The notes: generated by a model from the sequence alone, not told the origin. A DNA stretch of 28,325 bases from Macrostomum lignano (GCA_002269645.1 NIVC01005028.1:1-28325); one strand, 5' to 3'. Shown: positions 3,435 through 27,202, numbered from the stretch's first letter. Numbers and translations: made by a program.

Positions 3435-3740
3435 TCACTCCGAACTAGTCAATAAAATAACAATCCAAGAATCATTATAGGCGAGCATGAAACACTTCCT
3501 GTCTGGCACTCCAGAAAAAAATTGCGCGGCCTTCGTCGTAGAAGCCGATTCGGAGGAGGGAGGACTCATACGGATATTTGTAGAGGCTGCCAGTAAAAAC
3601 TAGCTCTACTCCGGTCACTATGCCGCCGCAAACACGAGTTACACGCAAAATGTGGCCTTCAATGACGCAGCAATTGTTAGGTTTCTTATTTGAGTATTTC
3701 TGGCTTGGAAGGTCAGCATGGAGCAGGTCACGCAACAAGG
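3435..3740 (-). pseudogene. C-terminal fragment of a second, diverged CACTA/CMC transposase
   Basis: LRDLL..KPNNCCVIEGHILRVTRVCGGIVTGVELVFTGSLYKYPYESSLLRIGF aligns with the end of ORF 5225..5812. After a 1-nt indel in the A7 run (3515-3521) it continues DRKCFMLAYNDSWIVILLTSSE* versus KKCFLFPRNGNIWLVIPLTETE*. Confidence 0.8.
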
Positions 3741-3796
3741 GGAGAAAGAAGAGAAGGGGGGAAAGAGAAAGAGAGCTAAGAAGAGACAGAACTTGA

Positions 3797-3878
3797 GCGG
3801 GCCGAATTGCTATTTTGAAGTTTCAAAGGACCCGAGGACCAGATAGAGAAGCCCGCGTTCAAAGTTTGCCAACCCCTG
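3797..3878. mobile_element. hAT-like (Charlie/MER58-type) terminal sequence
   Basis: Ends AAAGTTTGCCAACCCCTG (reverse complement CAGGGGTTGGCAAACTTT) with internal GCGGGCC, typical of hAT MITE ends; no partner end or TSD identified. Confidence 0.55.
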
Positions 3879-5224: not shown

Positions 5225-7457
5225 TCACTCCGTTTCGGTTAATGGGATAACAAGCCAGATGTTTCCATTACGAGGAAAAAGGAAACACTTTTTTACGGAA
5301 AACCAGAAATTACAGAGCGAATTTCTTGATAAAAAACCAATACCGAGTAGGGATGAAGTGTAAGGAGTGTTGTTCAATTCTTTGTTAAAAATTAAAACGA
5401 CACCTGAAACGATAGAGCCAGAGATGCATGTAATGCGTACAACTTTACTGTCAATTATACAGCAATTGTTAGGAGTCCTTACCGAATATTCAACAGAAAT
5501 AATAGGATTACTAGTGAGCAAATCGCGAAGAGAAAGCATTTGATTAAGCAAATGAGACGACACAAACCTTGTATTGCGTAAGCGCCTTTTCAGATGCGAC
5601 AAGTAGTTTTCAAATGGAAAGGCGGAGAATCCAAATACATTGCCACGTAGCCTAGCAGCATCAGCCAGGTGAAGCAACACATGAGTATTAAAGGTCATTA
5701 TGGTGTCGCCATACAATTCGGCGGCGTCGAACACAAAAAGGCGCATAGCAGCCTCAGCGAGGGACAGAAGGTGAGTCAGGGGCGAGATCAGAGCAGAATA
5801 TATAGCAGGCAAAGTGGAATAGCAGAAAATGCTTGTACAAAATTTCTAGTAGGAATTTCATAAAGAAGTACGGGCCCACATAGAGAACAAACGTGCGAAA
5901 CTCAGTGGCCTTGAAATGTCCCAATTCTCTGTCAATTCTTCGCGGGCGTCGCTGAAAGTTCGACGGCATGTAAGACGCATGTGACTCAATCTTATCAGAT
6001 AGAGTGGCGATTGCATCGGGACAGAGTTTACAGCGCCGCCCGTTGTCTTCTGCGAACAGGAAATGAAATAACCGACGAGCTATACCCAAGAAGAGAAGGT
6101 GCATTGTTTCCGGAGGGAAGGCGTCCAACATCGTCAAGTTTGGCAGTGAGAGCAGAGGGCTTGGCACTGCCTTCTGGTTGGACTCTCTGTGGAAAGGTAG
6201 GTGGGAGAATTAGAGTGATAGGTAGAGTGAGGAGTTAGGTAGAGGGAAGGGTAGAGGGAAGGATAGAATTAAAGGTAGAGTGATAGGCAGAATAATAAGT
6301 AGAGTGAGGAGTTAGGGGCAGGGGTAGAGGTTGAGTGAGGGGTGAGTGAGGAGTTAGAGGTAGAGTGAGAGAGACTGAGGGGTTAGAATTCGATGTTGAT
6401 TGAGGCAGAGTAGAGGTGGGTAGAGTAGATACTGACTTCTTACCTGTTTTCCCGGTAGACCTCGGCACTCCGACTTTCTCCGGTCACAGTGGGGTACACA
6501 ATCCGACGGTCCACCGTTTTCGCAACGGCCCTGCAGTACGGACACCCATGGAAAGCGTTGTGAGACATGGTAGACATGATGTACGATCGAGCCGGCGAGT
6601 CACAGACGAAAGTAACTCGTCTGATGCGGATTGGAACGGATTCTACGGTGATGAAATCAGTCATGAAGGCATCCAACTCCTTGGCGAATTCCGCTAAATA
6701 GTATATCGGCATTCCGTCGATGCCAAAATGAACGTCGATCTCGTAACCAGTCCTCCCATCTGCGGTAGTTATCGACGTCGGCTTTGTAAACTTCAGCTTG
6801 CCCGTCTGCAGCAGAAAGGCAAGGTTACTCTGGATGCCAAGGTAGGCGAAGTTGCCCATTCCCATGCTGTACTTCATGATTTTGCCTACTCTGCTCTCTG
6901 ATCCACCGACTGTCGCATGCGTCAGTCGGTGCAGGGTTTTGACGACGGGCATCCCACGGCTGTACAGCGCATTGAGCAAAAATTGCATGGCTCGATGTGA
7001 TATGTTGAATCGGACGAAAAACATCAGAAGCTCCTCGTTCAGACTCTCCATACTGGGCCTCAGATTCGCCTGATCGTCGTCATCTTCACTCTCTGGGTAG
7101 TCCATGTCGTCCTCGACTCCATTTTCTTCAAAGTGAACATGGTCGCACATTGCGCCCTGTAAAGAAGCAGGGTGAGAAGTAGAGCGAGGTTGAGTGAGAG
7201 GCAAAGTGAGAAGTTATCAAACATGCACATGCAGACTGAGATGTTACGCTTACCTGCCGGAGCTCGGAGTCGGAGGAAGGGTCCAGTGTGGGTGTATCCA
7301 CACTCTCATCCGGTACGGATGGAGCCTCAAATGGAGCAGAAACTGTCACATGTGGAGCTTGAACAGTCTGTTAAGCGCTCAAATTTTCAGTAAGCCAATT
7401 TTTGAATAGACGGGACATATTACTGTCTCCTTCAGTGCGCCTTCTCTTAGGTGGCAT
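5225..7457 (-). pseudogene. CACTA/CMC (EnSpm/Mirage-type) DDE transposase; 3 coding exons (7457-7254, 7156-6444, 6186-5225)
   Basis: Motifs FGIDGMP, FVCDSPARSY..HNAFHGCPYC, SPLLSLP..FPPETMHLLFLG, FKATEFRTF, LYG..FNTHVLLHL..FSAFPFENYLSHLKR. GT-AG introns 7253-7157 and 6443-6187 join the ORFs in frame. Start MPPKRRR. Lesions: TAA at 7371-7373, +1 C in the run at 5779-5782, in-frame deletion near 6700. Confidence 0.9.
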
Positions 7458-12288: not shown

Positions 12289-13715
12289 TCAGCTCACTTG
12301 AGTCAAGTCATTGACATGAGAAAATCTGCGTAGCCCTGGAAAGCAGAACCAATCTCCAACCGCAGATTTTTTGTCAGCTGGTGCCTTCGGAAGTGCGGCC
12401 AAACAAACCTTGATGGTGTTGGGATGCGTTTCTCCGGGCACCACAGCCAGCAGCTGGCGAAAGTCGCCAGCCAGCACCAGCAGCGCTCCTCCGAACGGCC
12501 GGTCGTTGCGCAGCAGATCCCACAGAGACCGCTCGACCATCTCCAGTTCCTTGCGATGCGTCATCGGCGCTTCGTCCCAAACAATGAGCTGCGTATGCCG
12601 CAGCATCTCAGCCAGCTTGCTCCGTCGGCCGATGGAACAGAAAGTATTGTCGAGACGCACCGCGCTGACGGGGATCTTGAACCTGGGCAGGTTGAGACAG
12701 CATTTTATATGCAGAGAAAATACTCGTAATACAATTTGCAGAAGTACTGCGTGTACAAACATGTAAGCTTGTTTATATTGAAGTCATATCTTCAATGAAA
12801 AATACAGAAAATGGCTTATCCTGTAAAAATATTTGATGTCATTAATCTAAGTTATTTTGACATTTTAATTTCTTAGTAAACAGTTTAAAGACAAGTCACA
12901 TGGAGTGTGCGGTCCTTCCCCCGGGACGAATGGTTGCCGCAATTCGAAACGACGCCACGGCAACAGCGATCTGACGCCTTGCTCGAACGCACATTAGCAG
13001 CAACGTCAGCAAGAACGTCTTTCCTGTTCCGCCGGGGGCATCGATAAAATGCAGTCCACCTCCGCCGGTCTCCAGATTGGCCTGCACGGCCTCAAAAATG
13101 ACTCGCTGCTCTTCAGTAAGCATGTCGATCTGGGCCTCGACTTCCGCGTGGAGCTCAGCGGCTTCTTGCGGTGTCGGCAGGCAGTCGGAATGCGGCGACT
13201 CTGAGAAAAAAAGCCTTCCGGACTTAGAATGTCGCCATGTCGCTGCCCTTAGTTATGTACTTGACGACATACTTTATCGCCTTGTCTGTCGCGCAGATCT
13301 CGACGTTCAGGTGACACCTAAACTCGCGCAGCAGCGCAGGGCAGTACGGCACCACCCAGCGGTTGTCAAAGGTGAAATTCGCCTTGTGACCGCCACGCAA
13401 CTTTGCCACCTTCTTCACCGATAAGCCGCCCATCTCGGTTGATCTGCGACGATAGTGCGGGTAGCCGTCCTCTTGAATCATCGTCACTGCCTGGAATTCT
13501 CTCGGATAGCGCTTGCTGCATGCGCCATTCTCCATGCATGACGCGGCTGGATTCAGCTGCATTCCACAGAGACCATGCAGGAGATTCTCAGCGACAAGCT
13601 TGTGCAGGTCCGCGTCGGCAACGGGGTCCGGGAGTTCTGCACTGATGATGGCGTCATACTTATCCGGCTTCAGCTTGACAGCCAACCAAAGCAGTGCGTC
13701 CACGTGGGGAAGACC
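12289..13715 (-). mobile_element. Helitron RepHel remnant A (HUH Rep plus PIF1-like helicase), spliced and internally deleted
   Basis: Rep: GLPHVDALLWL, ISAELPDP, CSKRYPREF, GYPHYRRR, DNRWVVPY, HLNVEIC, IKYVVKYITKGSD. Helicase: FIDAPGGTGKTF, GGRTAHSM|FKIP (intron 12899-12683), IVWDEAPM, PFGG..LAGDFRQLL. The Rep-helicase linker and helicase C-terminal half are missing. Confidence 0.93.
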
Positions 13716-13920
13716 TACGAGGGCACTACGAAAGTTTTTAGCTACATCTAAACAAGCAGCTATGAAACTGAAATTTTCAATATTCTCCACCTGCCTGGAT
13801 GCAGAGCCTTATTCTCTCAAACCAGGTGACAAAGCAGTGGTGCCATTCAGAAGTGGACACCCCTTTCACTATCTTGTCGAATGCATTAGCAGCCTCCTCT
13901 GCAGTCGAAAATCGCCATTT
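13716..13920 (-). mobile_element. mariner (Tc1/mariner) 3' remnant with one TIR and a flanking TA
   Basis: KWRFSTAEEAANAFDKIVKGVSTSEWHHCFVTWFERIRLCIQAGGEY is a typical mariner transposase C-terminus; terminus TA|CGAGGGCACTACGAAAGTTTTT (13716-13740) is irritans-like. The other TIR was not found. Confidence 0.8.
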
Positions 13921-14253
13921 CTAATAAAAGGCAATACAGAGGGGACAGTTTTAAAAGTCTTTTAACAAAAACGCCTTTTGAAATTCATTTGAATCCTATT
14001 CCTACCTACATCAATAGACGAATGAATATAATGGACTGCTAGTCTAGCCAACATCAAGGAATGAAGGCATACAATAGATTGCTAATCTAGTCAAAATAAT
14101 TTATAAAAGCCGAACATACACTACAGTGCTACACAATTGCCTATAGAATTCTCTATTTTTCAATATTCTATACTATTATGTCTATTTTACATATAATAAT
14201 ATTGTATACTGTGTCTATACAATAAATTCAAGTATAGATACAATGCAACTCAC

Positions 14254-14681
14254 TCTTGCAGGCGTACGTTTTGAAGGTCGCTTATTCGCGTTTAGTTACA
14301 CGCCCGTTCACTAACAGTCGGAACTTCATTGCTTCGAAATATTGATCCCTTGGAGTCAACAGAAAGAGACACCTCCATAGGATTATTCGTGCTGTTGTAT
14401 CTCGGATCCAAAGTCTTTACCATTCCGCCGGCTATCCGAACAGCATCGGAAGTATTGCAAACTTCCCAAATAGACCGCAGGTCCTTGCCGAAAACGCTGA
14501 CTCTCATCTCAGCCAAGTCGTCTACCAAGACGAATGAAAAAACTTCGCTTCGGACGTCGTTCTTCATGTAGGACCTGATCTCCTTCAAATCGGTTACAAG
14601 GCCAGTAACCGCCGCATTCATGTAGCCCAGTTTCAGGCCAGAGATATTTGCCTTAATCTTCTTGGTGATTGTAGACGCCAT
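14254..14681 (-). pseudogene. RPA70-like OB-fold ssDNA-binding protein gene (DBD-A plus start of DBD-B), probably Helitron-borne
   Basis: AVTGLVTDLKEIRSY..SEVFSFVLVDDLAEMRVSVFG..VRIAGGMVKTLDPRYNSTNNPMEV follows the RPA70 DBD-A pattern. Past TAA (14292-14294) the frame continues TRISDLQN (cf. FTGIDDLEN at the start of human DBD-B) to a GA|GTGAGT donor at 14253. Confidence 0.75.
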
Positions 14682-15587
14682 TGTAGCTTAGTTGTTCAGT
14701 TTAACAGTTTTAACAAAGTAGAAACAAAACTTAGAAAATAGAAAGAGCTTCTAGAAATGTTGCAGTGCAAAATACTTCAGTAGAAATAGCAGGTTAAACT
14801 CACAGTTTGCAATACATTTCGATTTAAATAGTCAAGCCCACACCCCAATCACCAGCAGTCAACCCCAACCCCACACAACTAAACAGCCAATCAGAACACA
14901 GATAACCCTCCCTCCCTGTGCAATCTCTTCGTTTCCAGACTAAATCGGCTGGGGTTGGTGGACTCTGGACCTTGTGGCGTGATCACACGACGCTAATTGA
15001 ACTCCCACGACCAACCCCTCGTTGTCTGCGACTTATCGTTTTTCACACTCATGAAAAGCAGCATAAACTTTCTTAGTCATTTATCCAGTTCATCTGAACT
15101 TGTCTGTGCTTACTCCATTTTCTCACCCTTCTCTATCTAATTTAGTCTTCTTATTCTTTTCTCTGTTTATACTCGCCGTCTCATTAGCTCTATAATCTCG
15201 CGCCTATCTCCACCACCCCTCCTAATTCTTACTTGCAATCAACCCTAACCTTGGAGTTTACACCTAAGTCATTGCAATGACTAAGAAAGTAGCAACAATT
15301 AAAAAGTTCAGGGTATTCTGTGTTGTTTACCGCTTCAAACTGGTTTTGATTCAATCTCCCCAGGCCCAGCTTGGCTTAAGTCACCCAACCAAAACTGTGC
15401 TCTCACCTCTTCTCTCTGTCAGTGTGAGCTTCACCCCTCAGCCGTGCATGGCTTAGCCCCAACCCGTCTAGCCACTGCCGTCACTCTTGCTTAGCTTCAT
15501 TTGTCCACCTCAGCCCTGAGTGGCTAATCCCCACACGACAGAGCTAATCGGGTTGGGCCAGCACCAACCCACCCCAGAAAGTTTTGC

Positions 15588-15613
15588 TATATATATATAT
15601 ATATATATATATA
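15588..15613. repeat. (TA)13 microsatellite
   Basis: Direct reading. Confidence 0.95.
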
Positions 15614-15727
15614 AAGAACAAATATATATATATTGTAGATTCTTACTCTACGCCAACTTAAGATATCCAAAAAATATAGTAAATTAAGATTTAGAATATT
15701 CGGATAAAACAATCTTTATATATTAAC

Positions 15728-16192
15728 ATGAAAGTAACCATAATCGAAAAAGGGCAGCAGCGCCGCCCGCGCCATCCCCGAAAACGTAAGTATTGCATAC
15801 ACTGTTGGTTACTACTTCCATATATTGTCATCTAATCACCAACCTCCTAGAACTTGCTTTCTTTCTTCCTCTTGACCAATCTTATGAATTGTTTCAAGGA
15901 ACCGATTCTGAGTTTAATTACGTACTTACGTACAAAACATACATGAAAACATGTACATTTATAAAAAAAACTGTCAGTATCACCATACCTTTCTTCTTTC
16001 ACAGCCATAAAATGCTACTTCTGCGGTGGCCCGCATCGGGTGGCCCGCTGCGACGCAATTAAAGAGTACTACCAACACCAGCAAGAACAGCAGCAGCAAC
16101 AGCAACAGAACCAGCAGGAGCAACCACGGGAAACGGAGGAGCAACCATCGCAGCAAGAAAGTCAGCAACAGCAGCAAAAAAAGCAGCTCTAA
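15728..16192 (+). CDS. Intact two-exon 81-aa microprotein: Arg-rich N-terminus, CCHC zinc knuckle (CX2CX3HX4C) and polyQ/Glu tail; exons 15728-15785 and 16005-16192
   Basis: AACATG start; phase-1 intron C|GTAAGT...TTTCTTCTTTCACAG|CC. Product MKVTIIEKGQQRRPRHPRKPIKCYFCGGPHRVARCDAIKEYYQHQQEQQQQQQQNQQEQPRETEEQPSQQESQQQQQKKQL*. AATAAA at 16251. A paralogue with the same intron phase lies at 19980-21892. Confidence 0.75.
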
Positions 16193-16760
16193 GACTCTAA
16201 GACTCCCGTCTATCTAACACTAACGAATTCGCACTATCGCACTACTACTAAATAAATTTAACAACTACTACTACTTTGGTTTAATTAATTTTGTTCGTTT
16301 AACTAATTTTGGTTTTGGTTTTGCACTACGAGTATAGAACTATAATCTTCATTTAATCAATTAATCATTTGCTATTATTTAACAATTAATCAAACTTTTT
16401 ATAAATTAATTTAACAACAACAAATACTACTACTACTACTACCAGTACCAACTTTCTCTACAACTAATCTCTGAAACCATAGAACTAAAATAGAACAAAT
16501 TAAACTTACTGCATGTACTTAAAACAAAACACTGCAACATGCAAGTACTATATTGATCACTCGCACTAACATGTACACTTAAAGTAATCTAACTAACCAA
16601 AATATCCGAATGGCTGACAATAAATTTACAGTAAACTTTCCTGCTTGAACTTCACACGCGTAACTTTTCCTAAATTAGGGGTGTAGTAAGATACCAGTCC
16701 TTTTCTCTGCGTACTCAGACAAAGAACAAGGAAACTCTGCACTGTAATTTTAATAGCGAA

Positions 16761-17530
16761 TTATCAAGTGCAATAATCCTTGGTTTGCCAAGTGCAATAA
16801 TCCTTAGCTTATTAAGAGCAATAATCCTTGGTTTATTAAGTGCAATAATCCTTATTGGTTTGCCAAGTGCAATAGTCCTTAGCTTATTAAGAGCAATAAT
16901 CCTTGGTTTATCAAGTGCAATAATCCTTATTAGTTTGCCAAGTGCAATAGTACTTAGCTTATTTAGAGCGATAATCCTTGGTTTATCAAGCGCAGTAATC
17001 CTTGGTTTATCAAGTGCAGTAATCCTTGGTTTATCAAGTGCAGTAATCCTTGGTTTATCAAGTGCAGTAATCCTTGGCTTATCAAGCGCAGCAATCCTTG
17101 GTTTATCAAGTGCAGTAATCCTTGGCTTATCAAGTGCAGTAATCCTTGGCTTATCAAGCGCAGTAATCTAAGTGATTTTAATTAGTCTTTCAATAAGAGC
17201 TCTCAATAAAAAAGCTTTGGTTTGCCAAGTGCAATAGTCCTTAGCTTATTAAGAGCAATAATCCTTGGTTTATTGACAGCAATAATCCTTGGTTTATTAA
17301 TAGCAATAATCCTTGGCTTATCGAGTGCAGTGATCCTTGGTTTATTAATAGCAATAATCCTTGGCTTATCAAGTGCAGTAATCCTTGGTTTAGTAATAGC
17401 AATAATCCTTGGCTTATCGAGTGCAGTAATCCTTGGTTTATCAATAGCAATAATCCTTGGCTTCTTGAGTGCAGTAATCCTTGGTTTATTAAGAGCAATA
17501 ATCCTTGGCTTATGGAGTGCAGTAATCTAA
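16761..17530. repeat. 24-bp minisatellite (AGTGCAGTAATCCTTGGTTTATCA consensus) in two duplicated blocks
   Basis: Roughly 30 degenerate units. The blocks (about 16761-17170 and 17215-17530) share a start variant and end with the same GCAGTAATCTAAGTG..TTT..TTAG..TTT.AATAA cap. Confidence 0.95.
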
Positions 17531-17939
17531 GTGTTTTTATTTAGCTTTTAATAAAAAAAGCAGTCTGGTCTGTTCAGCTCTAGGCTAGCTCTCATCGAAG
17601 TTATCAGTGAATTTGTACCACTTATATAATTCAACACTCACACAAAGTCAGGTAGAGTAAAAAGTCACGAAGCAGTTATGACATAATCAATTTCTTAGGC
17701 AAGTCAGTACCAGTCTCTATAAAAGTTAACAATATGGTTACGCAATATAAATTGAGTACTGTGCTATGCTTTCACACTCAACGCTGTGACGCAATTCAAT
17801 TGAGTGTCTTGTGTATTGTGATGCAATCTATTTTAGAATCAGAATTCAACCAGTCAGTTTTTCTGCTAGCATTCTTACAATGCATTTCGATGCTTTACCT
17901 TTGCAAAAAAGCATGTTTTTCGAATATTTAATCCCTTTA

Positions 17940-18155
17940 GCATCGAGAAATTTCTTAGCTACGATGCATGTACCGTCACGGAAAAATTTCTGATCGAATG
18001 GTGCAAGTTCGAAGAAAATCGGTTGAGCCATTTTTGCTAAAATCGATCACACACACACACACACACATACCGACAGACCATTTTTAGTATATGGAAAAAA
18101 AAAGTTTTGATTTTTAGTAAATTGGATGGATATAGTTTTCATTTTTAGTATATGA
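17940..18155 (-). mobile_element. Helitron 5' terminus (TC start) with internal (TG)n microsatellite
   Basis: Minus strand begins TCATATACTAAAAATG; the motif recurs as TCCATATACTAAAAATG; then (TG)n (18048-18067) and GGCTCAACCGATTTTCTTCGAACTTG, resembling the 5' layout of invertebrate non-autonomous Helitrons. Confidence 0.6.
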
Positions 18156-18187
18156 CTAGCTATTTAAAGCCCCCGTCTTCTGGGGGC
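18156..18187 (-). mobile_element. Helitron 3' terminus: GC-rich hairpin, 9-nt spacer and CTAG
   Basis: Minus strand GCCCCC-AGAAGAC-GGGGGC TTTAAATAG CTAG|T: 6-bp stem, 7-nt loop and CTRR end followed by T. Confidence 0.75.
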
Positions 18188-18319
18188 ATACAGTAATGTG
18201 ATGTAACCCCCTTTAATACTTAAGAACAGAACGGTAATATACGAGTAATAGATTAAATGCTTTTCCGTATCAGTCACTGGCCTAGATGCAGTGAGACGGG
18301 TGCTTCAACCGAATAGATA

Positions 18320-19480
18320 GATCCAACTCAAATTCTTCACCGGCAGATTGACGGCTGTGCCATGGGGAGCCCTTTAGCCCCCACCTTCCCAATCTTTGTC
18401 TGGCTCATTGGGAAGAGGAATTGATGAAGAGTGATGCGGCCCCCAAATTCTATAAGAGATATGTTGATGACACTTTTGGTTTTCAACGAAGGGACTGACT
18501 ATAGCCGATTCTTAGACATTTTCAACAGCACTCATCCGAACATAAAATTCACTGCTGAAGGAGATGGGAAATCTATACCTTTTCTAGACATTCAGATTAA
18601 TGTTGAAAACGATTGTGTCCACCAAAGTTTATCGTAAACCCACCTACACTGGTCTTCTGCTTAACTTCAATGCTCTCTGCCCAACCTAGTGGAAAGTGGG
18701 CCTGCTGCGTTGTATGCTCCACGAAATCTGTAGCACCTGGACTAGTTTCCACGAAGAAATTTGCTCGATTAGCACCTATTTTTCCAAAAAAAACTACCCG
18801 AAACGGTTCCTCGATTACCAAATTAGGAAATTCATTGATGGTAAAGTCAGGAATCCGAACAATATACAGAATAATGAAGAACAGAAAGACCTGACGACTG
18901 ATTACACCCATATTTCCATTCTTTTCTATGGGCCTGCTTCTGTTCATTTTAAAAAGAACCTCATCAAAGCGTTTAATAAGTATTTAAATGTGAAGCTCAT
19001 GGTCACTTTCCGTTGCGAGAAAATCGGTCAATTTGTTAGGAATTTGAAATGCCGCGTTCCCAGCTCCTTACGGGCAGGTGTCGTTTACCAATTTCAATGC
19101 TCTGGTGACCAGAGTATCACCTACATAGGTGAAACTACCCGACACCTGTACATGAGAAGTAGAGAACATAGGCAAAAGATGTCGGCCGTGCACGACCACC
19201 TGATGATATGCAAAGAATGCTGTGACAGCCAAATAGATAAAAAGTTTTCCACCATCCATACATGCTCAAATGAGTACAGACTAAAAGTACTTGAAGCCCT
19301 CATTGCAACTCTGTGAGCGCTCCGTCGGACTGTACAATCTACTGTTAATTTATATACATTTCTGACTTTTATCGACCCGTTTTTAGTCTTAATGTTGAAT
19401 ATAAATGAACAAATAAATCGTTACTAATTTTAATAGCCTGACGATGGCTGACGCGAGGCGAAACAAGTCGCATAAAATGA
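18320..19480 (+). mobile_element. Penelope-like retroelement (RT C-terminal part plus GIY-YIG endonuclease), 5'-truncated and degenerate
   Basis: QIDGCAMGSPLAP, YKRYVDDT, FNSTHPNIKFT, IPFLDI, TKVYRKPTYTG, GVVYQFQCS..TYIGETTRHL..RSREH, RLKVLEAL; several frameshifts and stops. Confidence 0.93.
19426..19478 (+). ncRNA. Minimal type I hammerhead ribozyme of the Penelope terminal repeat (slightly degenerate)
   Basis: CUGACGA core (19438-19444), extra U, stem II GGCU/AGGC (one G.G mismatch, loop GACGCG), GAAA, 2-bp stem III (AC-aa-GU), GUC cleavage triplet (19467-19469), bulged stem I (UUUUAAUAGC / GCAUAAAA). Confidence 0.65.
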
Positions 19481-19879
19481 TATCGCTCACCTTCTTAATT
19501 CTACTTTTAATCAATTATTAGTTGACAGTAGCTCGTAAGATATAAGATATAACATTTGATATGGAAAAAATACTTCTTTGTCTCCACAGCGCACTCGAAT
19601 TTTATTTATGTTCTCGTAGCCTGCAAACATTTGGTCGGAGCACTGCAACACAATTTCATCATGTCCAGATTGGCTCGCATGCTCTGTTGCTTAGGCCGCA
19701 CGGACCGACTCAAAGAGTTGCTGGCTGGACACCGCCTCTTCAAACCATTCTGTCAGATTGGAATCTTTGGCAAGGTGGTAGCGAATTTCAGCGAATAGTC
19801 ATTAAAGACTAATTAAAGTAATTACCAAATAGAACAAAAAATACCGGCCCACTGGCTCAATTCTGCGCTCGTGCGCCCC

Positions 19880-19887
19880 TATAAAAG
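19880..19887 (+). promoter_or_regulatory. Candidate TATA box (TATAAAAG) of the second zinc-knuckle/polyQ gene
   Basis: Consensus TATA about 100 bp upstream of the putative first exon. Confidence 0.4.
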
Positions 19888-19979
19888 ATCGCAATGAGGC
19901 AAGAGCTCTGAGATTACGCTTGTATTTGTTTTCTTCGTCATTAATACTTACATCACCTGAGCAACAGCACCGGCCAGCA

Positions 19980-21892
19980 AATACGAGTATAAGATAGTGA
20001 ACAACTACACCACGAACTCAAACTCAGGGCAGCGCCGTGGATGAGGGCGCCGGCCAAGGAACAATAATAAGTTTAATTTCCTTTTCCTATTTTTTAATGA
20101 GCCGCAAGCTTATTTGTTTCATGTACTCATAGTTACGTTAATTCTCTCTCATTCAACAGTTATCTGCTACCTTTGTGCCGGGCCGCATCCGGTCCGGCGT
20201 TGCCCGGCGCTGACTGCGCAGCGGCAGCAGCAGCATCATTAGCGGCAGCAGCAGAATCAGCACCAGTCGGTTCCGCAGCAGCAGCTGCAGCAACAAAGGG
20301 TCACTCTGGACGGCCAGCTGACCTTCGCCCAGCACGGAACCGAGGTGCGCCGTCGGATGGCCCAACGCCGCAGCGCCCCTCAGCGCCCTGGCCCACCGCA
20401 GCACCATTCGGGCCTGCGCTGACTACGGCGGTGCCGTATGGATCAACGGTGCCTCCCCGAGCACCCGGCGCAGCATTGAGAGCCAACAGGCGATCTGTGC
20501 GCGGCTCATCACCGGCTGCTGCAGCACGACGCCCAACCACTTGTCTCTCCGTCTCGCCGACCCCCCACCGATCAGCACCGTCGCCATCAAGCACGCCGTT
20601 AACCTGTTCGAGCGGATCGCCAGGCTCCCGCACGATTGCCCAGCGTACCTCACCGCCATGCGTGCTATTCGCCCACGCCTCAAGTGCCGGAGTTTCGAGG
20701 ACGACGCCGCCGTTGCTGGAGCAATCGACGACACTCGCTTCGAACTTGATCGGTCACGCCCTTTCGCGGATGTTGGCGTCACGCCGCGCAAGGGCTTCCG
20801 ATCTGCGCCACCACGCTGCATACCTCCGACCGCGAGCGCAGCCCCCGCCTCGCTCCCTGGCTTGACTACAGCGAGGGACACGTCGGTTTCGACCTCCAGG
20901 CTTGCAGTGTTCGCAGAGACGCCCCCGCCACTCTCCGGGCCGCAGCCGCAGCTGCGGGCATCGCGCGCGCCGAAGAGTTTCACGCCATTGCCTGGACCGA
21001 CGGCTCCGCCGAAAGCGGCACGGCCAACGGCGGCGGCGCAGCCGTCATCACCTTCAGCGATAACTCCACCTCTACCATCCGCGTCGCGGCCGGCCGCCTG
21101 TGCAGCAGCTTCCAGGCCGAGCTTGCCGCGATCCACGCCACCCTGGCCCACTGCATCCGCGAGCGCCCAGCCCCTCCTCCCAGCATAGCGGTCCTGACCG
21201 ACAGCCTCAGTGCTCTGACCGCTCTGGAGCAGGGACCCGCCGGCCAGACGAACGCCACCGTTGCGGCCTGCTGGCAGACCATCACCGAGTCCGCCGGGCG
21301 CTCCGACTTTCTGTTCTGCTGGGTCCCGGGCCACGCTGACATTGCCAGCAATACCGCTGCTGACCGCGCCGCCGCCGAGGCTGCCGGGCTGCCCCAGGTC
21401 GACGTGCCTATTAGCCTTGCGTCAGCCCGTGCGGCCATCCGCCGCGACCGCCGCGCCTTGGATGCCCGCATTCTGGGCTCTCCCCTCCGGCCCATGCATT
21501 CCCGTAACCGCCGCGAGCACGTCGCCATAAATCAGCTCAGAGCTGGCGTCAGCCCCCTGTGCGGGGCCTCCCGCCTCCGCCTCGGCATCAACGAACGAAG
21601 ACGCCTCCTGCCCTGACTGCGGCGCGCTCGACACGGTCGACCACGTCCTTCGCCGCTGCCCCCGGGGCGACTCTCTGCGCCTCCGGCTGTTCGGCGGCGG
21701 CGACCGGCTGGACGGGCCCGCCGGTAGAATTCTCGCCTTGCTCCGTGGGATGGGGCGCTGGCCCCCGCCCGTTTTAGCGCCGCAGCGCTAAGGGCGCGCT
21801 GGCAGAAGAAGAAGAAAAAGCAGCCGGCTCCGCAGCAGCAGCAGCCTGTCCAGCCGGTTCAGGATGACGACGAAATGCTTCTAGACGTCTGA
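19980..21892 (+). pseudogene. Second copy of the zinc-knuckle/polyQ microprotein gene, pseudogenised and split by a LINE
   Basis: Exon 1 ..YKIVNNYTTNSNSGQRRG*GRRPRNN with donor mutated to A|ATAAGT (20067); acceptor CAACAG|TT (20159); exon 2 ICYLCAGPHPVRRCPALTAQRQQQHH*RQQQNQ..QQQ. After the LINE: QPAPQQQQPVQPVQDDDEMLLDV* (21821-21892). AATAAA at 22005. Start codon not identified. Confidence 0.65.
20298..21816 (+). mobile_element. 5'-truncated non-LTR retrotransposon (I-group/Ingi-like): RT thumb, RNase H, CCHC motif and (GAA)4 tail
   Basis: VTLDGQLTFAQH, IRACADYGGAVW, ARLITGCCSTTP; RNase H WTDGSA..SSFQAELAAI..VLTDSLSAL..WVPGHADIASNTAADRAA; CPDCGALDTVDHVLRRCP; GAAGAAGAAGAA at 21805-21816. Several frameshifts. 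Confidence 0.9.
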
Positions 21893-23372
21893 ACTTTTGA
21901 TCTTTCGAACTTTGAACTTTGTTTGAACTTTGAAATCATGAGCTTAAATTTAAAGTATATTATCATTCGCACTATTATTTGTGAGTGCACTTTCTTGGAA
22001 GTGGAATAAAGAACTTCATAGTTAATATCCTTTTCAACTCCGAAAAAAAATCAGCACATTCTATTTCTATTAGAATATCCTAATTAATTTTCAAAAGTTT
22101 TCTCCTCGCAAGGAACCAAACAGAATATGTAAGTTAGGGAGATGCTTCTGCAGAAATTGCCACCAGCAAGACAGAAACCCTGCACAGTTTGATCCAATGG
22201 ATCTATTCAGGTGTCAGTCTTCCTGCTTGCTGGCTTCAACTCCGCATGGGAGACATTTATTGGGGCTAATCAGTGCACTCAGCATACTCAGCTGGGGAAC
22301 TGCTGTTCAGGGAACAATTAAGCGTCACAAGGAGCCTTCAGCTCTGCTGAGGCTACTTCAGACCATGGCTGCATAGTCTCTTCTGGTTGAGGCAGAAGAA
22401 AGTATGAATCATGAAAGTAGCGAACATGTAATTTTCAGCTGCTTCTTCAGGGCCAACACTATACAACCAACCTGCTCTCACTACAGTGGCACAAAAATTG
22501 GCAGTCCTACACTTTCGTTCGGTAAATTATTTTGACTTCAAATCTGTGCTCAGTGAACAATTTTAAGAATTTCAAACGTGAGTCTATATCTCGGTTTAAA
22601 AGCGTATGGGGCTGACATGGTCTAAGCCTGAGGTGTGAGCCCAAGAGAAGATATGAATTTGACATGATATTGTACCACGACCTTTTTGCCCAGCAGACCA
22701 ATAATTGTTCCCAGCATTGCCATAGACTTCATTAAGGCCCGCTGATGTTCCATTAACGCCCTTGAAGCATGGGTATTAGTATACTATTAGTCTGTGGTCT
22801 ACAGCAAAGGTGGGACAGGTGGGCTTATAGCTGCGAAACGGAGAATATCTCTGAGATAAAACATAGAATGGCTGGTTGCCCTACAGCACCATCTGCTATC
22901 GTTCCTGCCAATTAAGTTTGACCCACTGCTGAACTGTTTTAGCTTAACAGTTTACAGCTGAATTGCTTCAGTTTATAGTTTAGTTTGTTCGCTGAGCACA
23001 AAATTGATTATTTGAAGTAGAAAATATTTATTTTAATCAAGCCACTACTTGCAAGTGTAGCAACAATGTGTTCAGCTCTTATTAGCCTTAAGGAATACAG
23101 CTGCTGTTTGTGCCTGAATTTAACTATAGAGCGCATTATTACTTTTTTATCTTAATATATTCATACTAAAGCTGCTTGTTTATATCTGCTTTAGCTATTG
23201 GCTGGCAATAATCGGTCTAAAACTGTTCAAACTATGGTGCTTTCCAAGTTTTCAATGCTTTTAGTGCCACAGTAGTATGATTTAAACTGATATGCCTTCC
23301 GTGGGCCCTTGGTGTTGAACACCATTTACATATCAGTTGGCTGTACTTGTGACGGCTTTGGCATTCCCAGAT

Positions 23373-23860
23373 TCAGTCAGTCAGCACCTCAGGGTACACG
23401 AAATTCTTTGTTCTCTCACCGAAGATTCGGACGCGCACGCTGTACGCTCTTGGCCCGAGAAAGCGCCGTACAGCTGGCCGTGAGCAAAGCAGCCGACAGC
23501 CAGGTCGATGCCCACGGTGTCGAGCGACTGGCCCTGCGACTTGTGAATCGTCAGGCAGAACTCGGCTTGACTAGGAACTGCAGCCGCTTGAAGCAGACTG
23601 GCAGGTCAGCATTGTTGGGCTCAAGCGGAATCCTCGGCAGCAGGATCTCATCTCCAGTGAACTGGCCGGCAGCGAATTTGCAGTCTGTCCTCCTGGCAGC
23701 AGAGTGGCTGCGTTTCCAGACGACGCAACAGCCAGGGCGATTTCCCCTCGACTCCGCACAAACGCCGACAGGAGCGTCAAGGGAATGTAGGCCGCCCGAG
23801 CCAACGACAAGATCCGCAGTCACAGCCTCGTAGATGGCCATCTGTTCGGCCGTCAGCATT
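23373..23860 (-). mobile_element. Helitron helicase remnant B (N-terminal stub fused by deletion to the C-terminal motifs)
   Basis: LTAEQMAIYEAV..GGLHSLDAP, then ILLPRIPL..FKRLQFLVK, (M)TIHKSQGQSLDTVGIDL..CFAHGQLYGAFS, RTKNFVYPEVLTD* (stop 23373-23375): canonical Helitron helicase C-terminus with frameshifts. Confidence 0.92.
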
Positions 23861-24780
23861 GGCAGTCCCACCCGATGAAAACGTGACTGTGGTCTAGAAT
23901 CGTAAATAAAGCGTTTGCATCGTATTTGAATCGCTTTTGAAGCGTTTTGGAGTTGCACTGGGGGATAGGAGGGTACTGTGTGATTCAAAACCGACGAGAT
24001 GTCACGGTACACGTAAAAGACGCGCGTTTCTGAATAACTTTGTTTCTGAATAACTTTGAAGCGTTTTGTGGAAACGCGTCAAAAACGATTCAGGTGACGC
24101 GTTTTAGCGGCGTTACTGAATCGCTTTGACTCGCACTTAAATCGTTTGAATAGAGCTATCGCTGAAGCGTATCTGACGCGTTGTTGACGCGCTTTTGACT
24201 CGGAGTTGTAATTTGAGAAGTTTTTAATATTTGAAGCATTTCCGATTCTCTTCTGCTTCTCGTAGTCCTTATAGTACCATATTTTGTAGAAAGGAATCGC
24301 TACAAGAACTGTAGCAGAGCACTCAGTGCAGTTCGAATAATAAAAAAAAATTGTAACTCAATTTAACTACTAAATTTATTTAGGGTGATATGCACTTTAT
24401 TTAATTATTATTCCAGATTTATTTGATTGTAGTACATATCAATTTGAACACAATAAGATGCTCCTGAGTCTAAAATAATATTAATTATATTAAAATTACT
24501 AGGGCACAATCTTGGCGGCAGTTAATTTACTAAGTCTAATGTTTAAATTCGGTTTGGATTAGCTCTACGTGTATATGGCATATAGGGAAAATATTGTATT
24601 ATCGGATAGCACTGGACTCAAAACACCCGCACTTAAAACCGCGCCAAAAATGACCCACTTAACCTCTAATACTATCTGCAAAAAGGTAACCAAAATAATA
24701 GAGGAGTATATAAATTATAGACAATAATTTTCCTAGAACTAAACATAAAAGCGTTTTTCGCCTAACCCTATATTTTATTA

Positions 24781-25020
24781 CAAAAACTTGACAAACGTAA
24801 CAAAAAAAACTTTGACAAAAGTAGCCAAAAAACTTGACAAAAGTAACCAAAAAATTTGACAAAAGTAACAAAACACTTGACAAAAGTAGCCAAAAAACTT
24901 GACAAAAGTAAGAAAAGACTTGACAAAAGTAACCAAAAAATTTGACAAAAGTAACAAAAGACTTGACAAAAGTAACCAAAAAACTTGACAAAAGTAACAA
25001 AAGACTCGACAAAAGTAACA
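24781..25020. repeat. 21/22-bp tandem repeat (CAAAAAACTTGACAAAAGTAA[C]), about 11 units
   Basis: Direct reading; largely alternating 21- and 22-bp units. Confidence 0.95.
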
Positions 25021-25303
25021 AAAATATAACAAATAGCATAAAAGGCTTAACAAAATGCCCATGCCCATTAGCTCTATGAGGCGTGAATGTTTTCGCTGTT
25101 GTGTGGTTGTTAGGGTGGAGGTATTCATCTGCAAATAATCGCGATGTACATGTGTCGATGTACACTGATGTACATTGCAAATATATAAATCGTTGCACGT
25201 GGTTTTAGCCTTTAGCTACTTCATGTGTTTTTGGTCTTGCTTAACTTATAAGTTAACTTAGCTCGTATAACTTCTTGCCTTCTAATGCTCTCAGTTTACA
25301 GTT

Positions 25304-27202
25304 TTAATCAGCAGTCACCTCGTCGGACTTTTTTGCACGGCGCCTCTGCTCACTGCGCAAGCGTCGGAACACTAGCTGAATTTCCGCAGACGTCACTGCA
25401 GCTCCTGTGACTCGCACCAGGTATGACTGCACAACGTCCAGGAAACTAGATGGCACCAGTTCGCGGGTGCCCTGGTTGCGAGTCGGACCGGTCAAAGATT
25501 TTGTCGCGATGTCCTCTTCTGAGAAAACCGCGCGCAGTAGAGCCCGCACAAGCAGAAGCTGCGTGTGGCTGGACCGCATCCGCTTGTTTTCTTCAGTTGC
25601 GGACACTACCTCCGAGTAGCTTCTTGCCTTGACCTACAAGTGGAAGCAAGGATTTGGACAAGTCTACTGTGTGTTGGAAGTAATCGTCAAATGTTCATCA
25701 CCGTGATAATCATCAGAAAGAAATATACCTTGTATGGGTGCCCTGGAATCAGGGAGACCATATCTGGCATATCGGTCACGGCACCGGTGCCGCTGGTGTC
25801 GGCATCAGCAGTGGCGGCAACATCGGCAACGGGCAGCGGGAATGCAGTAGCGGCAACTGACACAGTGGCCGCAGCTGTATGTGGCGCGTCCAATGGAATG
25901 CCCATCAGCTCAGCTAGCATTCCAGACGCAAAATCGCCCGTGTCTGTGACTGGCTGTGCTGCTGGTGCATTGCTGCTGGCTGCGTCTTTAATGGCATCAG
26001 CAAAATGGGCGATGCGGAGAAATTGCGCCCTGAATGCGGCCTTTGAAGAGGAACTGTCATGCTGTACCTTAGTAATAGAAGGAGTAAAGAATTGACTGTA
26101 CAACCTTGAAATTTCTACAATAGCATGCGCGAATATAAATTTGGGCCCCGTGTTGCCAACCTGGACCAACTCCGCTTGTAGCTTGTCCAGCTCCTTCTCC
26201 AGGCCTGAAATACGGAGGCGCATTGCAGTGCTCTCCTGCTGCAGCCTGGCGTTGACTAGGTCCTTCGCGGCGCAATCCTCCTTGAGCTGCTGATGCTCAA
26301 TTTGTAAACATTTCATTGTGTGCCGCACACTCTGCAGCTCCGCGTCGCGCACATGGCACTGCGTGCAATCAAGTGACACTGAAAATTCGGGATTTTGGCA
26401 GACTTCGGAACAATTTTTGGCGAACTCGTGATTACCGTTTAGGTGCTGGCCCCATAAAAGGACAGTCCTGTGCACATTGCTTCTGGTTCGGCTTCTTAGC
26501 CCATTGCAGCAAAACGTGATACCGCTAGTGAAACCCTCTTCGTCAATGCATCTGAGCAATCAATTGAGACGCACCTGTCTCGACTGAAGTGGCTTGCATG
26601 GAAGCAGTAGCTGTGGCGGCAGCCTGCCTATTAGGAGCAGCGGCGACAGCGGCAGCCTCCTTACCAGCAGCGGCGACAGCGGCAGCATGCTTAGCAGCGG
26701 CAGCCTGCTTACCAGCAGGGGTGGCGGAGGTGGAGGCGATGGGCTTCGGGACGGTGGATGCAGCAGCAGCTTGGGGGTCCAGATGTAGTACAGGTGACCC
26801 TGTCTGAAAGTCTGTGAGGTAGAATGGCTCAACCTCAGTATGTAAGAGGCTCGGCTTTTGTGACTATGCGTCAATGAACCTGAGCAGTCAATTGACACGC
26901 ACCTGTCCAGACTGGAATGGCTTGCATGGAAGCAGCGGTGTGACGCTCGGGATGGAGGTGGCCGGCTCCACGGCTGTCTGATATAGTGGCTCCTCAACAG
27001 TGGCTGGCTCAGCAGTTTGGGCACTTGCTGATGCAGTTGCGGAGCCAATCGAACCACGTCTTGGCAGCTTTGACGGTGGTTTCAGGCGTGACACACTGTG
27101 TGGCAGGTTCTTAGGTCGGCGACCCCGCGCTTTGAGGTGCACCGCCTCGGAACAGCCGTCAATTATGCGACTAGGACTGTGCATGTTCCTACGCTTTGGC
27201 AT
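25304..27202 (-). CDS. Apparently intact 5-exon gene (about 471 aa): basic N-terminus, Ala-rich region, CxxC plus coiled coil, C-terminal BEN domain; exons 27202-26903, 26803-26575, 26378-26161, 26067-25729, 25633-25304
   Basis: GT-AG introns with compatible phases (0, 1, 0, 0) give 1416 nt without internal stops. The C-terminus LLVRALLRAVFSEEDIATKSLTG..RELVPSSFLDVVQSYL..SAEIQLVFRRLRSEQRRRAKK fits the BEN pattern. The 93-bp intron 26160-26068 is stop-free and least certain. Confidence 0.72.

What the first reader, a model, noticed from the sequence alone, without database searches (positions are those of the whole stretch)
15728..21892. Unrecognised zinc-knuckle/polyQ microprotein gene family, two copies, invisible to the ORF track
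Seen: an intact 81-aa two-exon gene (15728-16192) and a diverged paralogue (19980-21892). They share the same architecture: Arg-rich first exon, phase-1 intron directly before a CX2CX3HX4C knuckle (CYFCGGPHRVARC versus CYLCAGPHPVRRC), Gln-rich tail and downstream AATAAA. The knuckle residues are conserved while the DNA has diverged, consistent with past selection. Known: CCHC knuckles with basic flanks bind single-stranded nucleic acids (nucleocapsid/CNBP-like), and Gln-rich tails promote condensates. Inference: a small ssDNA/RNA chaperone or condensate-forming protein. Each copy lies within an inferred Helitron span, antisense to RepHel, so it may be Helitron cargo rather than a host gene.
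Basis: partly seen in the sequence, partly recalled or inferred. Interest (0 to 1): 0.85.

Follow-up and report, generated by a model that had tools for sequence, protein, structure and literature searches.

The report
Small zinc-knuckle gene and its dead duplicate
In a transposon-crowded stretch of a Macrostomum (flatworm) genome there is one intact, unannotated two-exon gene model for an 81-residue protein with a basic arm, a zinc knuckle and a glutamine-rich tail, plus a wrecked duplicate 4 kb away; it looks like a real but modest lineage-specific gene unit, with no homologue, no expression evidence and no demonstrable link to Helitrons.

Summary
Copy 1 (15728-16192, +) splices cleanly (GTAAGT...CACAG, phase 1) into an 81-aa ORF. 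It has a basic N-terminus, one CX2CX3HX4C knuckle and a Q/E-rich tail, with AATAAA 59 nt after the stop.

Copy 2 is a pseudogene. It has no ATG, a TGA in the basic exon, a weak out-of-phase donor and a TAG in exon 2. A 1.5-kb 5'-truncated LINE (RNase H) with a 25-bp target-site duplication sits in its Gln tail.

The homology is not chance:
- The knuckle motif occurs twice in the window against 0.035 expected.
- A strong acceptor lies 5-8 nt before the first Cys codon in both copies, in the same phase.
- Knuckle pS is 0.77 against pN 0.22.

Flanks and introns share nothing, so the repeated unit is the gene alone.

The window is Macrostomum lignano or a close relative. Three protein searches found no homologue. 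The M. lignano annotation pipeline dropped repeat-overlapping transcripts, so that absence says little.

"Helitron cargo" is not supported: the copies sit at non-equivalent positions next to two different Helitron remnants.

Best reading: a lineage-specific small gene, locally duplicated, probably a nucleocapsid-like nucleic-acid binder. A mobile-element accessory ORF or a gag relic remain possible. Interest is modest.

The parts
15728..15785 (+). Copy 1, exon 1: ATG plus the basic arm (MKVTIIEKGQQRRPRHPRK, then the first base of the Pro codon)
   Evidence: This is a GC-rich island (65%) in AT-rich surroundings.
15786..16004 (+). Copy 1 intron, 219 nt, from GTAAGT to TTTCTTCTTTCACAG, phase 1
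   Evidence: GTAAGT occurs only 4 times on the + strand of the window. Acceptor-like sites have a density of 0.0011 per nt. GC content is 23-38%.
16005..16192 (+). Copy 1, exon 2: knuckle CYFCGGPHRVARC (16013-16051), a Q/E-rich tail and the stop TAA (16190-16192)
   Evidence: Gln is encoded by 13 CAG and 9 CAA, and the longest pure CAG run is 3 codons. AlphaFold2 on this peptide alone gives a coil over the knuckle (pLDDT 86-88) and then a helix over residues 12-38.
16227..16256 (+). Copy 1 3'UTR landmarks: the 11-mer ATTCGCACTAT (16227) shared with copy 2, and AATAAA (16251-16256)
20027..20071 (+). Copy 2, relic of the basic exon (GQRRG*GRRPRNNNK): in-frame TGA at 20042-20044, no ATG, and only a weak GTTTAA donor that is out of phase
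   Evidence: The RRPR word is shared with copy 1, p about 0.04. This is a GC-rich island (70%).
20072..20159 (+). Copy 2 intron relic, about 88 nt, AT-rich, ending TCTCTCTCATTCAACAG
20160..20288 (+). Copy 2, exon 2, 5' part: knuckle CYLCAGPHPVRRC (20165-20203), the start of the Gln-rich tail, an in-frame TAG at 20240-20242, and the first copy of the target-site duplication (20264-20288)
   Evidence: DNA is 61.7% identical to copy 1 over 133 nt.
20289..21820 (+). Insertion of a 5'-truncated, GC-rich (63-65%) non-LTR retrotransposon fragment: the C-terminal end of RT, RNase H, a C-terminal Cys/His motif, and a (GAA)n/A tail
   Evidence: Pfam RNase_H E=1.5e-11. Composition. A 25-bp target-site duplication matches 22/25, and removing the insert restores the reading frame.
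21821..21892 (+). Copy 2, exon 2, 3' part: the second copy of the target-site duplication, the tail end ...QQQQPVQPVQDDDEMLLDV, and the stop TGA at 21890-21892
21965..22010 (+). Copy 2 3'UTR landmarks: the 11-mer ATTCGCACTAT (21965) and AATAAA (22005-22010)

Best explanation
This is a small two-exon protein-coding gene unit, about 0.5 kb, lineage-specific and unannotated, in a Macrostomum (lignano-like) genome. It was duplicated locally in the same orientation.

Copy 1 is still intact. Copy 2 died through stop codons, loss of its start and donor, and a LINE insertion into its Gln tail.

The encoded 81-aa, 9.9-kDa protein has three parts:
- a strongly basic N-terminal half (pI 11);
- a single Cys-X2-Cys-X3-His-X4-Cys knuckle (C23, C26, H30, C35), with aromatic Y24/F25 and a G-G-P turn;
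- an acidic, Gln-rich, helix-prone C-terminal half (pI 4.6).

Inferred mechanism, not shown: the four ligands hold one Zn2+. The knuckle aromatics and the basic arm bind unpaired bases and the backbone of single-stranded RNA or DNA, as in a minimal nucleocapsid or Lin28-type knuckle. The Q-rich helix mediates self-association.

What is shown: the gene architecture, its duplication, past purifying selection on the knuckle, and conservation of the acceptor site.

What is inferred: expression, zinc and nucleic-acid binding, present-day function, and that this is a host gene rather than a mobile-element gene.
For: - Copy 1 has a clean gene model.
- The two knuckles are the only ones in the window, against 0.035 expected.
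- tblastn and blastn between the copies are confined to the acceptor, knuckle and start of the tail.
- Across the 15 codons at the knuckle, pS=0.77, pN=0.22, Fisher p=0.002, and differences by codon position are 3:4:9.
- Both copies have an acceptor-like site, in the same phase, a few nt before the first Cys. Site density is 0.0011 per nt, which gives roughly p=0.004-0.013 for copy 2 given copy 1.
- One of only four GTAAGT on the + strand closes the basic exon.
- Both copies show the same GC profile: GC-rich island, AT-rich spacer, GC-rich exon.
- They share RRPR (p about 0.04) and a 3'UTR 11-mer (p about 0.002).
- Gln is encoded by mixed CAG and CAA codons, so the tail is not a pure microsatellite.
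- Introns and flanks have no detectable similarity. Only the parts a gene would constrain survived.
- Neither copy is flanked by terminal inverted repeats.
- No retroelement ORF adjoins either knuckle.
- The nearest solved relatives by sequence are Lin28 and HIV-1 NC knuckles, at non-significant E values of 0.17-3 and with a one-residue gap.
- The M. lignano annotation used TransDecoder and removed transcripts overlapping repeats (PMC5730564), which explains the absence from protein databases.
Against: - No homologue was found in 5.8 billion proteins or 1.84 billion representatives.
- No expression or splice-junction data were available.
- Only one intact copy exists.
- An open frame proves little here, because CAG-rich DNA is open in other frames too (the 63-aa ORF at 16026-16217).
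- The selection test rests on 15 codons that were found through amino-acid similarity, which is an ascertainment bias. Selection on a mobile-element gene would give the same signal.
- The knuckle fails Pfam zf-CCHC.
- The neighbourhood is almost entirely transposon debris.
- The genome itself could not be searched, so copy number is unknown.
Confidence: 0.45

Rival explanations
1. The unit is an accessory ORF or captured cargo of a mobile element, either a Helitron as the first reader suggested or another repeat family. On this view it is multi-copy in the genome, and the selection seen on the knuckle acted for the element, not the host.
For: - Both copies lie next to Helitron remnants on the opposite strand. 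One remnant carries RPA-like OB, Rep and PIF1 (12292-14687), the other a helicase fragment (23384-24078).
- Helitrons capture intron-containing gene pieces (established knowledge).
[quoted passage not shown] A fragment of such an element lies between the copies.
- The region is saturated with transposons.
- The unit has no homologue among annotated host proteins.
Against: - The positions relative to RepHel are not equivalent: copy 1 is 1047 bp upstream and divergent, copy 2 is 1492 bp downstream and convergent.
- The two Helitron remnants share only about 57-59% amino-acid identity over a helicase motif, and no flanking DNA.
- No Helitron termini could be located.
- There are no terminal inverted repeats and no hammerhead ribozyme or pLTR signature.
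- Similarity between the copies stops at the borders of the unit.
- Two same-strand copies 4.15 kb apart, separated mostly by a satellite and a Penelope-like fragment, fit local duplication better than two independent insertions.
Confidence: 0.25
2. The unit is a decayed relic of a retroelement gag or ORF1 nucleocapsid region. The knuckle is all that remains, and the start codon, splice-like signals and poly(A) signal are coincidental.
For: - CX2CX3HX4C is the spacing of the middle knuckle of the three in jockey- and Nimb-clade LINE ORF1 proteins (PMC2330053, PMC3391268).
- Basic residues before a knuckle are typical of nucleocapsids (alignments).
- LINE and Penelope-like debris is present locally.
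Against: - There is no first (CX2CX4HX4C) or third (CX2CX3HX6C) knuckle near either copy.
- Sequence upstream of both knuckles is AT-rich and full of stops, not ORF1 body.
- The similarity begins at a conserved acceptor and then reappears in a short GC-rich basic island, which is an exon-intron pattern.
- No ORF1 or gag protein was hit in any search.
- The LINE inside copy 2 is a later insertion with its own target-site duplication, not the source of the knuckle.
Confidence: 0.15
3. The two exons belong to a larger host transcription unit. They could be alternative terminal exons, or a gene whose true 5' end is supplied by upstream exons or by the spliced leader. In that case the 81-aa model is incomplete.
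For: - M. lignano uses spliced-leader trans-splicing widely and has long transcriptional units (PMC5730564).
- The nearest TATA-like sequence in copy 1 is only about 10 nt before the ATG, which is an odd promoter geometry.
Against: - The frame upstream of the ATG is closed by a TAG at 15692 (read).
- The upstream 1 kb belongs to the 5' side of the Helitron remnant.
- No other coding-looking + strand ORF lies nearby.
Confidence: 0.07
4. The resemblance between two unrelated Cys/His-containing stretches in CAG-rich DNA is chance.
For: The similarity is short. The Gln-rich parts align trivially because they are low complexity.
Against: - The motif occurs twice against 0.035 expected.
- 9 of 13 residues are identical, and the unusual X3 spacing is shared.
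- The acceptor is conserved in position and phase.
- The two copies share a 3'UTR 11-mer.
Confidence: 0.03

Closest known systems
Retroviral-type CCHC zinc knuckles (Pfam zf-CCHC PF00098; HIV-1 nucleocapsid, Lin28, CNBP)
   Same: The ligand order is Cys-Cys-His-Cys. An aromatic residue follows the first Cys and a Gly follows the second. A basic stretch lies immediately N-terminal. The best, non-significant PDB sequence matches are Lin28 and HIV-1 NC knuckles.
   Different: The spacing between the second Cys and the His is 3 residues, not 4. No Pfam zf-CCHC match appears even at E<=10. The PDB matches have E=0.17-6 and need a one-residue gap. There is a single knuckle in an 81-aa protein with a Q-rich tail.
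Middle knuckle of the triple Cys-rich cluster of LINE ORF1 proteins (jockey, I and Nimb clades)
   Same: The CX2CX3HX4C spacing is identical (PMC2330053, PMC3391268).
   Different: In those ORF1 proteins the knuckle sits between a CX2CX4HX4C knuckle and a CX2CX3HX6C knuckle, inside a protein of several hundred residues, with ORF2 downstream. Here neither flanking knuckle exists. The knuckle follows an intron, the ORF ends 46 codons later with a poly(A) signal, and no ORF1 protein is detectably similar.
Gene fragments captured by Helitrons
   Same: The unit lies adjacent and antisense to RepHel remnants, and it retains its intron as DNA-level capture would.
   Different: The position relative to RepHel is not equivalent in the two cases. 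The flanks are not shared. Termini were not found. No parent gene is known.
Upstream gag-like zf-CCHC ORFs and intron retention in Penelope-like elements
   Same: Some Penelope-like elements carry an upstream ORF with a gag-like knuckle, such elements retain introns, and they favour (TA)n targets (PMC8557442). A Penelope-like fragment and a (TA)n tract are nearby.
   Different: The local Penelope-like element is only a 5'-truncated fragment running from RT motif 4 to the GIY-YIG endonuclease (about 18250-19400). It is separated from copy 1 by 2 kb of unrelated DNA and a satellite. No hammerhead ribozyme was detected.

Membership tests
zf-CCHC retroviral-type zinc knuckle (PF00098) | C-X2-C-X4-H-X4-C spacing | tested here: not met
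   Both copies have C-X2-C-X3-H-X4-C.
zf-CCHC retroviral-type zinc knuckle (PF00098) | Match to the Pfam profile at or above the gathering score | tested here: not met
   hmmscan at E<=10 lists no zf-CCHC family at all.
zf-CCHC retroviral-type zinc knuckle (PF00098) | Aromatic residue after the first Cys, Gly after the second Cys, and basic flanks | tested here: met
   The sequence reads RRPRHPRKPIK-C-YF-C-GG-P-H. It aligns to Lin28 and NC knuckles in this register.
zf-CCHC retroviral-type zinc knuckle (PF00098) | Binds one Zn2+ and single-stranded nucleic acid | not testable with these tools
   This needs a peptide, metal-binding spectroscopy and a gel-shift assay.
LINE ORF1 (jockey/I/Nimb) Cys-rich cluster | CX2CX3HX4C middle knuckle | tested here: met
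   The literature pattern is in PMC2330053 and PMC3391268.
LINE ORF1 (jockey/I/Nimb) Cys-rich cluster | Flanking CX2CX4HX4C and CX2CX3HX6C knuckles in one long ORF1 | tested here: not met
   Only two knuckle motifs exist in six frames of the window, one per copy. Sequence upstream is AT-rich and full of stops.
LINE ORF1 (jockey/I/Nimb) Cys-rich cluster | Detectable sequence similarity to ORF1 or gag proteins | tested here: not met
   No hit at E<=10 in 5.8 billion proteins. No hit at E<=0.001 in 1.84 billion representatives.
Helitron cargo | Lies between identifiable Helitron termini (5' TC; 3' hairpin plus CTRR) | tested here: inconclusive
   No convincing terminal hairpin or terminus was found. 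No reference copies were available.
Helitron cargo | Same position and shared flanks in independent Helitron copies | tested here: not met
   Copy 1 is upstream of and divergent from its Helitron remnant; copy 2 is downstream of and convergent with a different one. The flanks share no similarity.
Expressed microprotein (smORF) gene | Intact ORF with start, stop, canonical splice sites and a poly(A) signal | tested here: met
   This holds for copy 1 only. Copy 2 fails on every count.
Expressed microprotein (smORF) gene | Purifying selection on the coding sequence | tested here: inconclusive
   The knuckle gives pS 0.77 against pN 0.22, p=0.002. The test covers 15 codons of one pair, is subject to ascertainment bias, and one partner is now a pseudogene.
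Expressed microprotein (smORF) gene | Transcript, splice-junction and translation evidence | not testable with these tools
   No Macrostomum genome or RNA data could be reached. Exact-protein look-ups found nothing, and a look-up of the spliced product was not accepted.

The most novel reading that the evidence does not exclude
A flatworm-specific microprotein that annotation has missed. It would be a minimal 'nucleocapsid in miniature': a basic arm, one non-canonical CX2CX3HX4C knuckle and a Q-rich self-associating helix. It may have been exapted from the middle knuckle of a LINE ORF1. It would be maintained by selection in a transposon graveyard and act on RNA or on transposon nucleic acids, for example in germline or neoblast granules.
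Probability: 0.25. Interest if true: 0.5.

Novelty: new variant of a known kind. Interest (0 to 1): 0.3.

Why it matters
If copy 1 is expressed, it is an example of a lineage-specific microprotein that standard pipelines discard. Those pipelines set a minimum ORF length and mask repeats, and this genome is more than half repeats.

It would also be an unusually small stand-alone zinc-knuckle protein. Its knuckle spacing is otherwise described in LINE ORF1 proteins, which hints at exaptation of a retroelement module.

If it turns out to be a multi-copy element ORF, it would help define an uncharacterised repeat family in Macrostomum.

Either way the consequence is local: better annotation and one candidate RNA-binding microprotein. 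It does not change how any system is understood.

Tried and rejected
1. Protein homology.
- The spliced 81-aa product and a two-sequence profile were searched against 5.8 billion proteins. Exon 2 was searched against 1.84 billion representatives. None gave a hit.
- The spliced product could not be submitted to the representative search or to the exact-protein contig look-up.

2. Pfam. Only sub-threshold noise appeared (DUF1644, E=0.049). No zf-CCHC family was listed.

3. Degenerate DNA pattern for the knuckle, scanned against JGI metagenome contigs. It gave one hit, on a 1.5-kb contig of bacterial appearance. There the motif lies in a 54-aa ORF that overlaps longer ORFs, and its second-to-last variable position is Ser, not Arg. 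This is chance.

4. Exact-protein contig look-ups for window ORFs and for the three M. lignano OB-domain proteins, made to fetch other Helitron copies. Nothing is on record, so the Helitron association could not be tested on independent copies.

5. The idea that the unit is the N-terminal part of a Penelope-like element. Rejected.
- The local element is only a 5'-truncated fragment.
- No RT remnants lie between copy 1 and it.
- No hammerhead ribozyme was found.
- A CUGACGA...GAAAC string at 19441-19465 does not fold better than shuffles.

6. Terminal inverted repeats around either copy: none.

7. Helitron terminal hairpins: nothing convincing.

8. Structure.
- AlphaFold2 on exon 2 alone gave a plausible coil followed by a helix.
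- Foldseek against the PDB found nothing.
- This neither helps nor hurts.

9. Gapped DNA alignment of exon 1 and the 3'UTR between the copies: not above shuffles.

Full report
ORGANISM AND SETTING

The 129-aa ORF at 14292-14681 (-) is 92-96% identical to three UniRef proteins of the flatworm Macrostomum lignano. They are annotated as OB or REPA_OB_2 domain proteins. The window therefore comes from M. lignano or a very close relative.

The neighbourhood is almost all mobile-element debris:
- A frameshifted Helitron remnant lies on the minus strand. It carries an RPA-like OB ORF (14687-14295), a Rep segment with the IKYVVKYITKG tyrosine motif (13808-13227), and PIF1 helicase pieces at Pfam E=1e-24 and 3.5e-16.
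- A 24-bp satellite of about 32 units occupies 16761-17527.
- A 5'-truncated Penelope-like fragment lies on the plus strand at about 18250-19400. I recognise it from the motifs DGCAMGSPLAP, RYVDD, HPNIKFT and VYQFQCSGDQSITYIGETTRH in the three-frame translation. This identification rests on my reading of the motifs, because Pfam gave no hit.
- A second, different Helitron helicase fragment lies on the minus strand at 24078-23384.

M. lignano is more than half repeats. Its published annotation used TransDecoder and removed transcripts overlapping repeats (PMC5730564).

THE OBSERVATION: COPY 1

- ATG at 15728.
- A 58-nt first exon that ends in a basic run.
- GTAAGT at 15786.
- A 219-nt AT-rich intron ending TTTCTTCTTTCACAG.
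- A second exon from 16005 that joins in phase 1.

The product is MKVTIIEKGQQRRPRHPRKPIKCYFCGGPHRVARCDAIKEYYQHQQEQQQQQQQNQQEQPRETEEQPSQQESQQQQQKKQL. Its stop is at 16190-16192 and AATAAA is at 16251. Without splicing, the ORF stops 16 codons after the donor.

The signals are not commonplace. GTAAGT occurs four times on this strand in 28 kb. Polypyrimidine+YAG acceptors occur at 0.0011 per nt.

THE OBSERVATION: COPY 2

Copy 2 is homologous but dead.
- Its knuckle CYLCAGPHPVRRC (20165-20203) and the copy-1 knuckle are the only C-X2-C-X3/4-H-X4-C motifs in six frames. Shuffles predict 0.035.
- An acceptor-like site ends at 20159, 5 nt before the first Cys codon. In copy 1 the distance is 8 nt. 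Both are phase 1.
- Upstream, after an AT-rich gap of about 88 nt, a GC-rich island reads GQRRG*GRRPRNNNK, against GQQRRPRHPRK in copy 1. That frame has a TGA and no ATG. Its only GT (GTTTAA at 20071) is out of phase. The frame that would splice in phase is not Arg-rich.
- Exon 2 has a TAG at 20240.
It contains the end of RT, RNase H (Pfam E=1.5e-11), a C-terminal Cys/His motif and a GAA/A-rich tail.
- This insert is flanked by a 25-bp target-site duplication: CAGTCGGTTCCGCAGCAGCAGCTGC at 20264-20288 and CAGCCGGCTCCGCAGCAGCAGCAGC at 21821-21845, matching 22/25.
- Deleting the insert and one duplicate restores a 58-codon exon 2...QNQHQSVPQQQQPVQPVQDDDEMLLDV*.

The LINE therefore landed in a pre-existing Gln-coding tail. 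It is not the source of the knuckle.

HOW FAR THE HOMOLOGY REACHES

DNA similarity between the copies is limited to 15986-16114 against 20134-20266. That region is the acceptor, the knuckle and the start of the tail, at 61.7% identity over 133 nt. Introns and flanks share nothing.

Three weaker signals extend the unit:
- The RRPR word in the basic island occurs in 4% of shuffles.
- An exact 11-mer, ATTCGCACTAT, occurs only twice in the window, each time between a stop codon and its AATAAA. This happens in 0.24% of shuffles, but I noticed it post hoc.
- Both copies show the same GC profile: GC-rich island, AT-rich spacer, GC-rich exon.

Gapped alignment scores for exon 1 and the 3'UTR do not beat shuffles, so these extensions are suggestive only.

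SELECTION

Over the 15 codons from two before the first Cys to the last Cys, synonymous sites are saturated (pS 0.77). Non-synonymous change is low (pN 0.22). The Fisher test gives p=0.002, and differences by codon position are 3:4:9.

Conservation of the acceptor tract at saturated neutral divergence points the same way.

There are four caveats:
- The pair was found through its amino-acid similarity.
- The sample is tiny.
- One partner is now a pseudogene.
- Selection on a transposon-borne gene would look the same.

ORF intactness itself is weak evidence, because CAG-rich DNA is open in other frames too. The Gln codons are mixed (13 CAG, 9 CAA, no pure run longer than 3), so the tail is not a plain microsatellite.

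WHAT IT IS NOT

It is not a LINE ORF1 fragment.
- The CX2CX3HX4C spacing is that of the middle of three knuckles in jockey- and Nimb-clade ORF1 proteins (PMC2330053, PMC3391268).
- Neither flanking knuckle exists here.
- The upstream sequence is non-coding.
- Nothing in the databases matches.

It is not the N-terminus of the nearby Penelope-like element.
- That element is 5'-truncated.
- It lies 2 kb from copy 1, with a satellite in between.
- No hammerhead ribozyme is detectable.

It has no terminal inverted repeats.

HELITRON CARGO

The two copies do lie on the strand opposite to Helitron remnants, but not in comparable places.
- Copy 1 starts 1047 bp upstream of, and divergent from, the RPA-like ATG of remnant 1.
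- Copy 2 ends 1492 bp downstream of, and convergent with, the helicase fragment of remnant 2.
- The two remnants share only a helicase motif at about 57-59% amino-acid identity, and no flanking DNA.
- Helitron termini could not be located.
- Independent Helitron copies could not be fetched.

The claim is therefore unsupported rather than disproved.

If the satellite and the Penelope-like fragment were later arrivals, which I infer but did not show, the two units would have been much closer together on the same strand. That is what a local tandem duplication looks like.

LIKELY FUNCTION (INFERENCE)

The protein is bipartite:
- Residues 1-35 have pI 11.0 and 10 Lys+Arg.
- Residues 36-81 have pI 4.6 and 22 Gln.

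The best, non-significant PDB sequence matches are the Lin28 and HIV-1 nucleocapsid knuckles with their basic leaders. They align with a one-residue gap.

AlphaFold2 on exon 2 alone gives a non-regular knuckle (pLDDT 86-88), followed by a confident helix through the first part of the Q-rich tail, up to the first Pro. Foldseek found no match.

I therefore propose a single-zinc, nucleocapsid-like binder of single-stranded nucleic acid with a self-associating Q-rich helix. None of this has been shown.

VERDICT

This is a real, homologous, gene-shaped unit, present as one intact copy and one pseudogene. It is absent from all the protein collections searched.

Whether it is a host microprotein gene (my best reading, about 0.45), an element-borne ORF (about 0.25) or a gag-derived relic (about 0.15) cannot be settled without the Macrostomum genome and transcriptome.

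It is a new variant of a known kind, the small zinc-knuckle protein. Interest is modest.

Noticed in passing
window 20289-21820 (+): A GC-rich (63-65%), 5'-truncated non-LTR retrotransposon fragment. It has RNase H and a C-terminal CPDCG...H...C motif, and several frameshifts. It ends in a GAA/A-rich tail and is flanked by a 25-bp target-site duplication matching 22/25.
   Followed up: yes
window 12292-14687 (-): A Helitron remnant with an RPA-like OB ORF 92-96% identical to Macrostomum lignano UniRef proteins, a Rep tyrosine motif and frameshifted PIF1 helicase pieces. This is what identifies the source organism.
   Followed up: partly
window 23384-24078 (-): A second, different Helitron helicase fragment. 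The N-terminal Walker region and the C-terminal TIHKSQGQSLD motif are present and the middle is missing. It is about 57-59% identical in amino acids to the first remnant.
   Followed up: partly
window 16761-17527: A 24-bp satellite of about 32 units, 75% matching. It produces spurious 100-130-aa ORFs on both strands.
   Followed up: no
window ~18250-19400 (+): A 5'-truncated Penelope-like element fragment running from RT motifs 4-5 and the thumb to a GIY-YIG endonuclease with the CCHH-type insert. Pfam gives no hit and Rfam finds no hammerhead. A CUGACGA...GAAAC string at 19441-19465 could be a decayed ribozyme core.
   Followed up: partly
window 16745 and 19425: The exact 13-mer TAATTTTAATAGC occurs only twice in the window: just before the satellite, and just after the ORF of the Penelope-like element. 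It may mark the two ends of one Penelope-type insertion. The surrounding similarity is not significant.
   Followed up: no
window 24780-25024: A tandem repeat with 22-bp and 43-bp periods, 83-90% matching, next to the second Helitron fragment.
   Followed up: no
window 3478-3822 and 5225-7204 (-): A transposase-like coding region (weak DUF4218 match, E=8e-5, below the cutoff) and a 43%-identical paralogous fragment 1.5 kb away.
   Followed up: no
window 1515-1660 and 2457-2604: A 148-bp direct repeat at 98% identity, about 0.9 kb apart. It could be short LTR-like or duplicated element ends.
   Followed up: no
window 25690-26559 (-): A 290-aa open frame with a coiled-coil-like middle (weak ATG16 and tropomyosin noise) and an Ala/Thr-rich tail. 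It matches no family.
   Followed up: no
window 15588-15633: A (TA)23 microsatellite 95 bp upstream of the copy-1 ATG. (TA)n tracts are favoured targets of some Penelope-like elements and of Helitrons.
   Followed up: no
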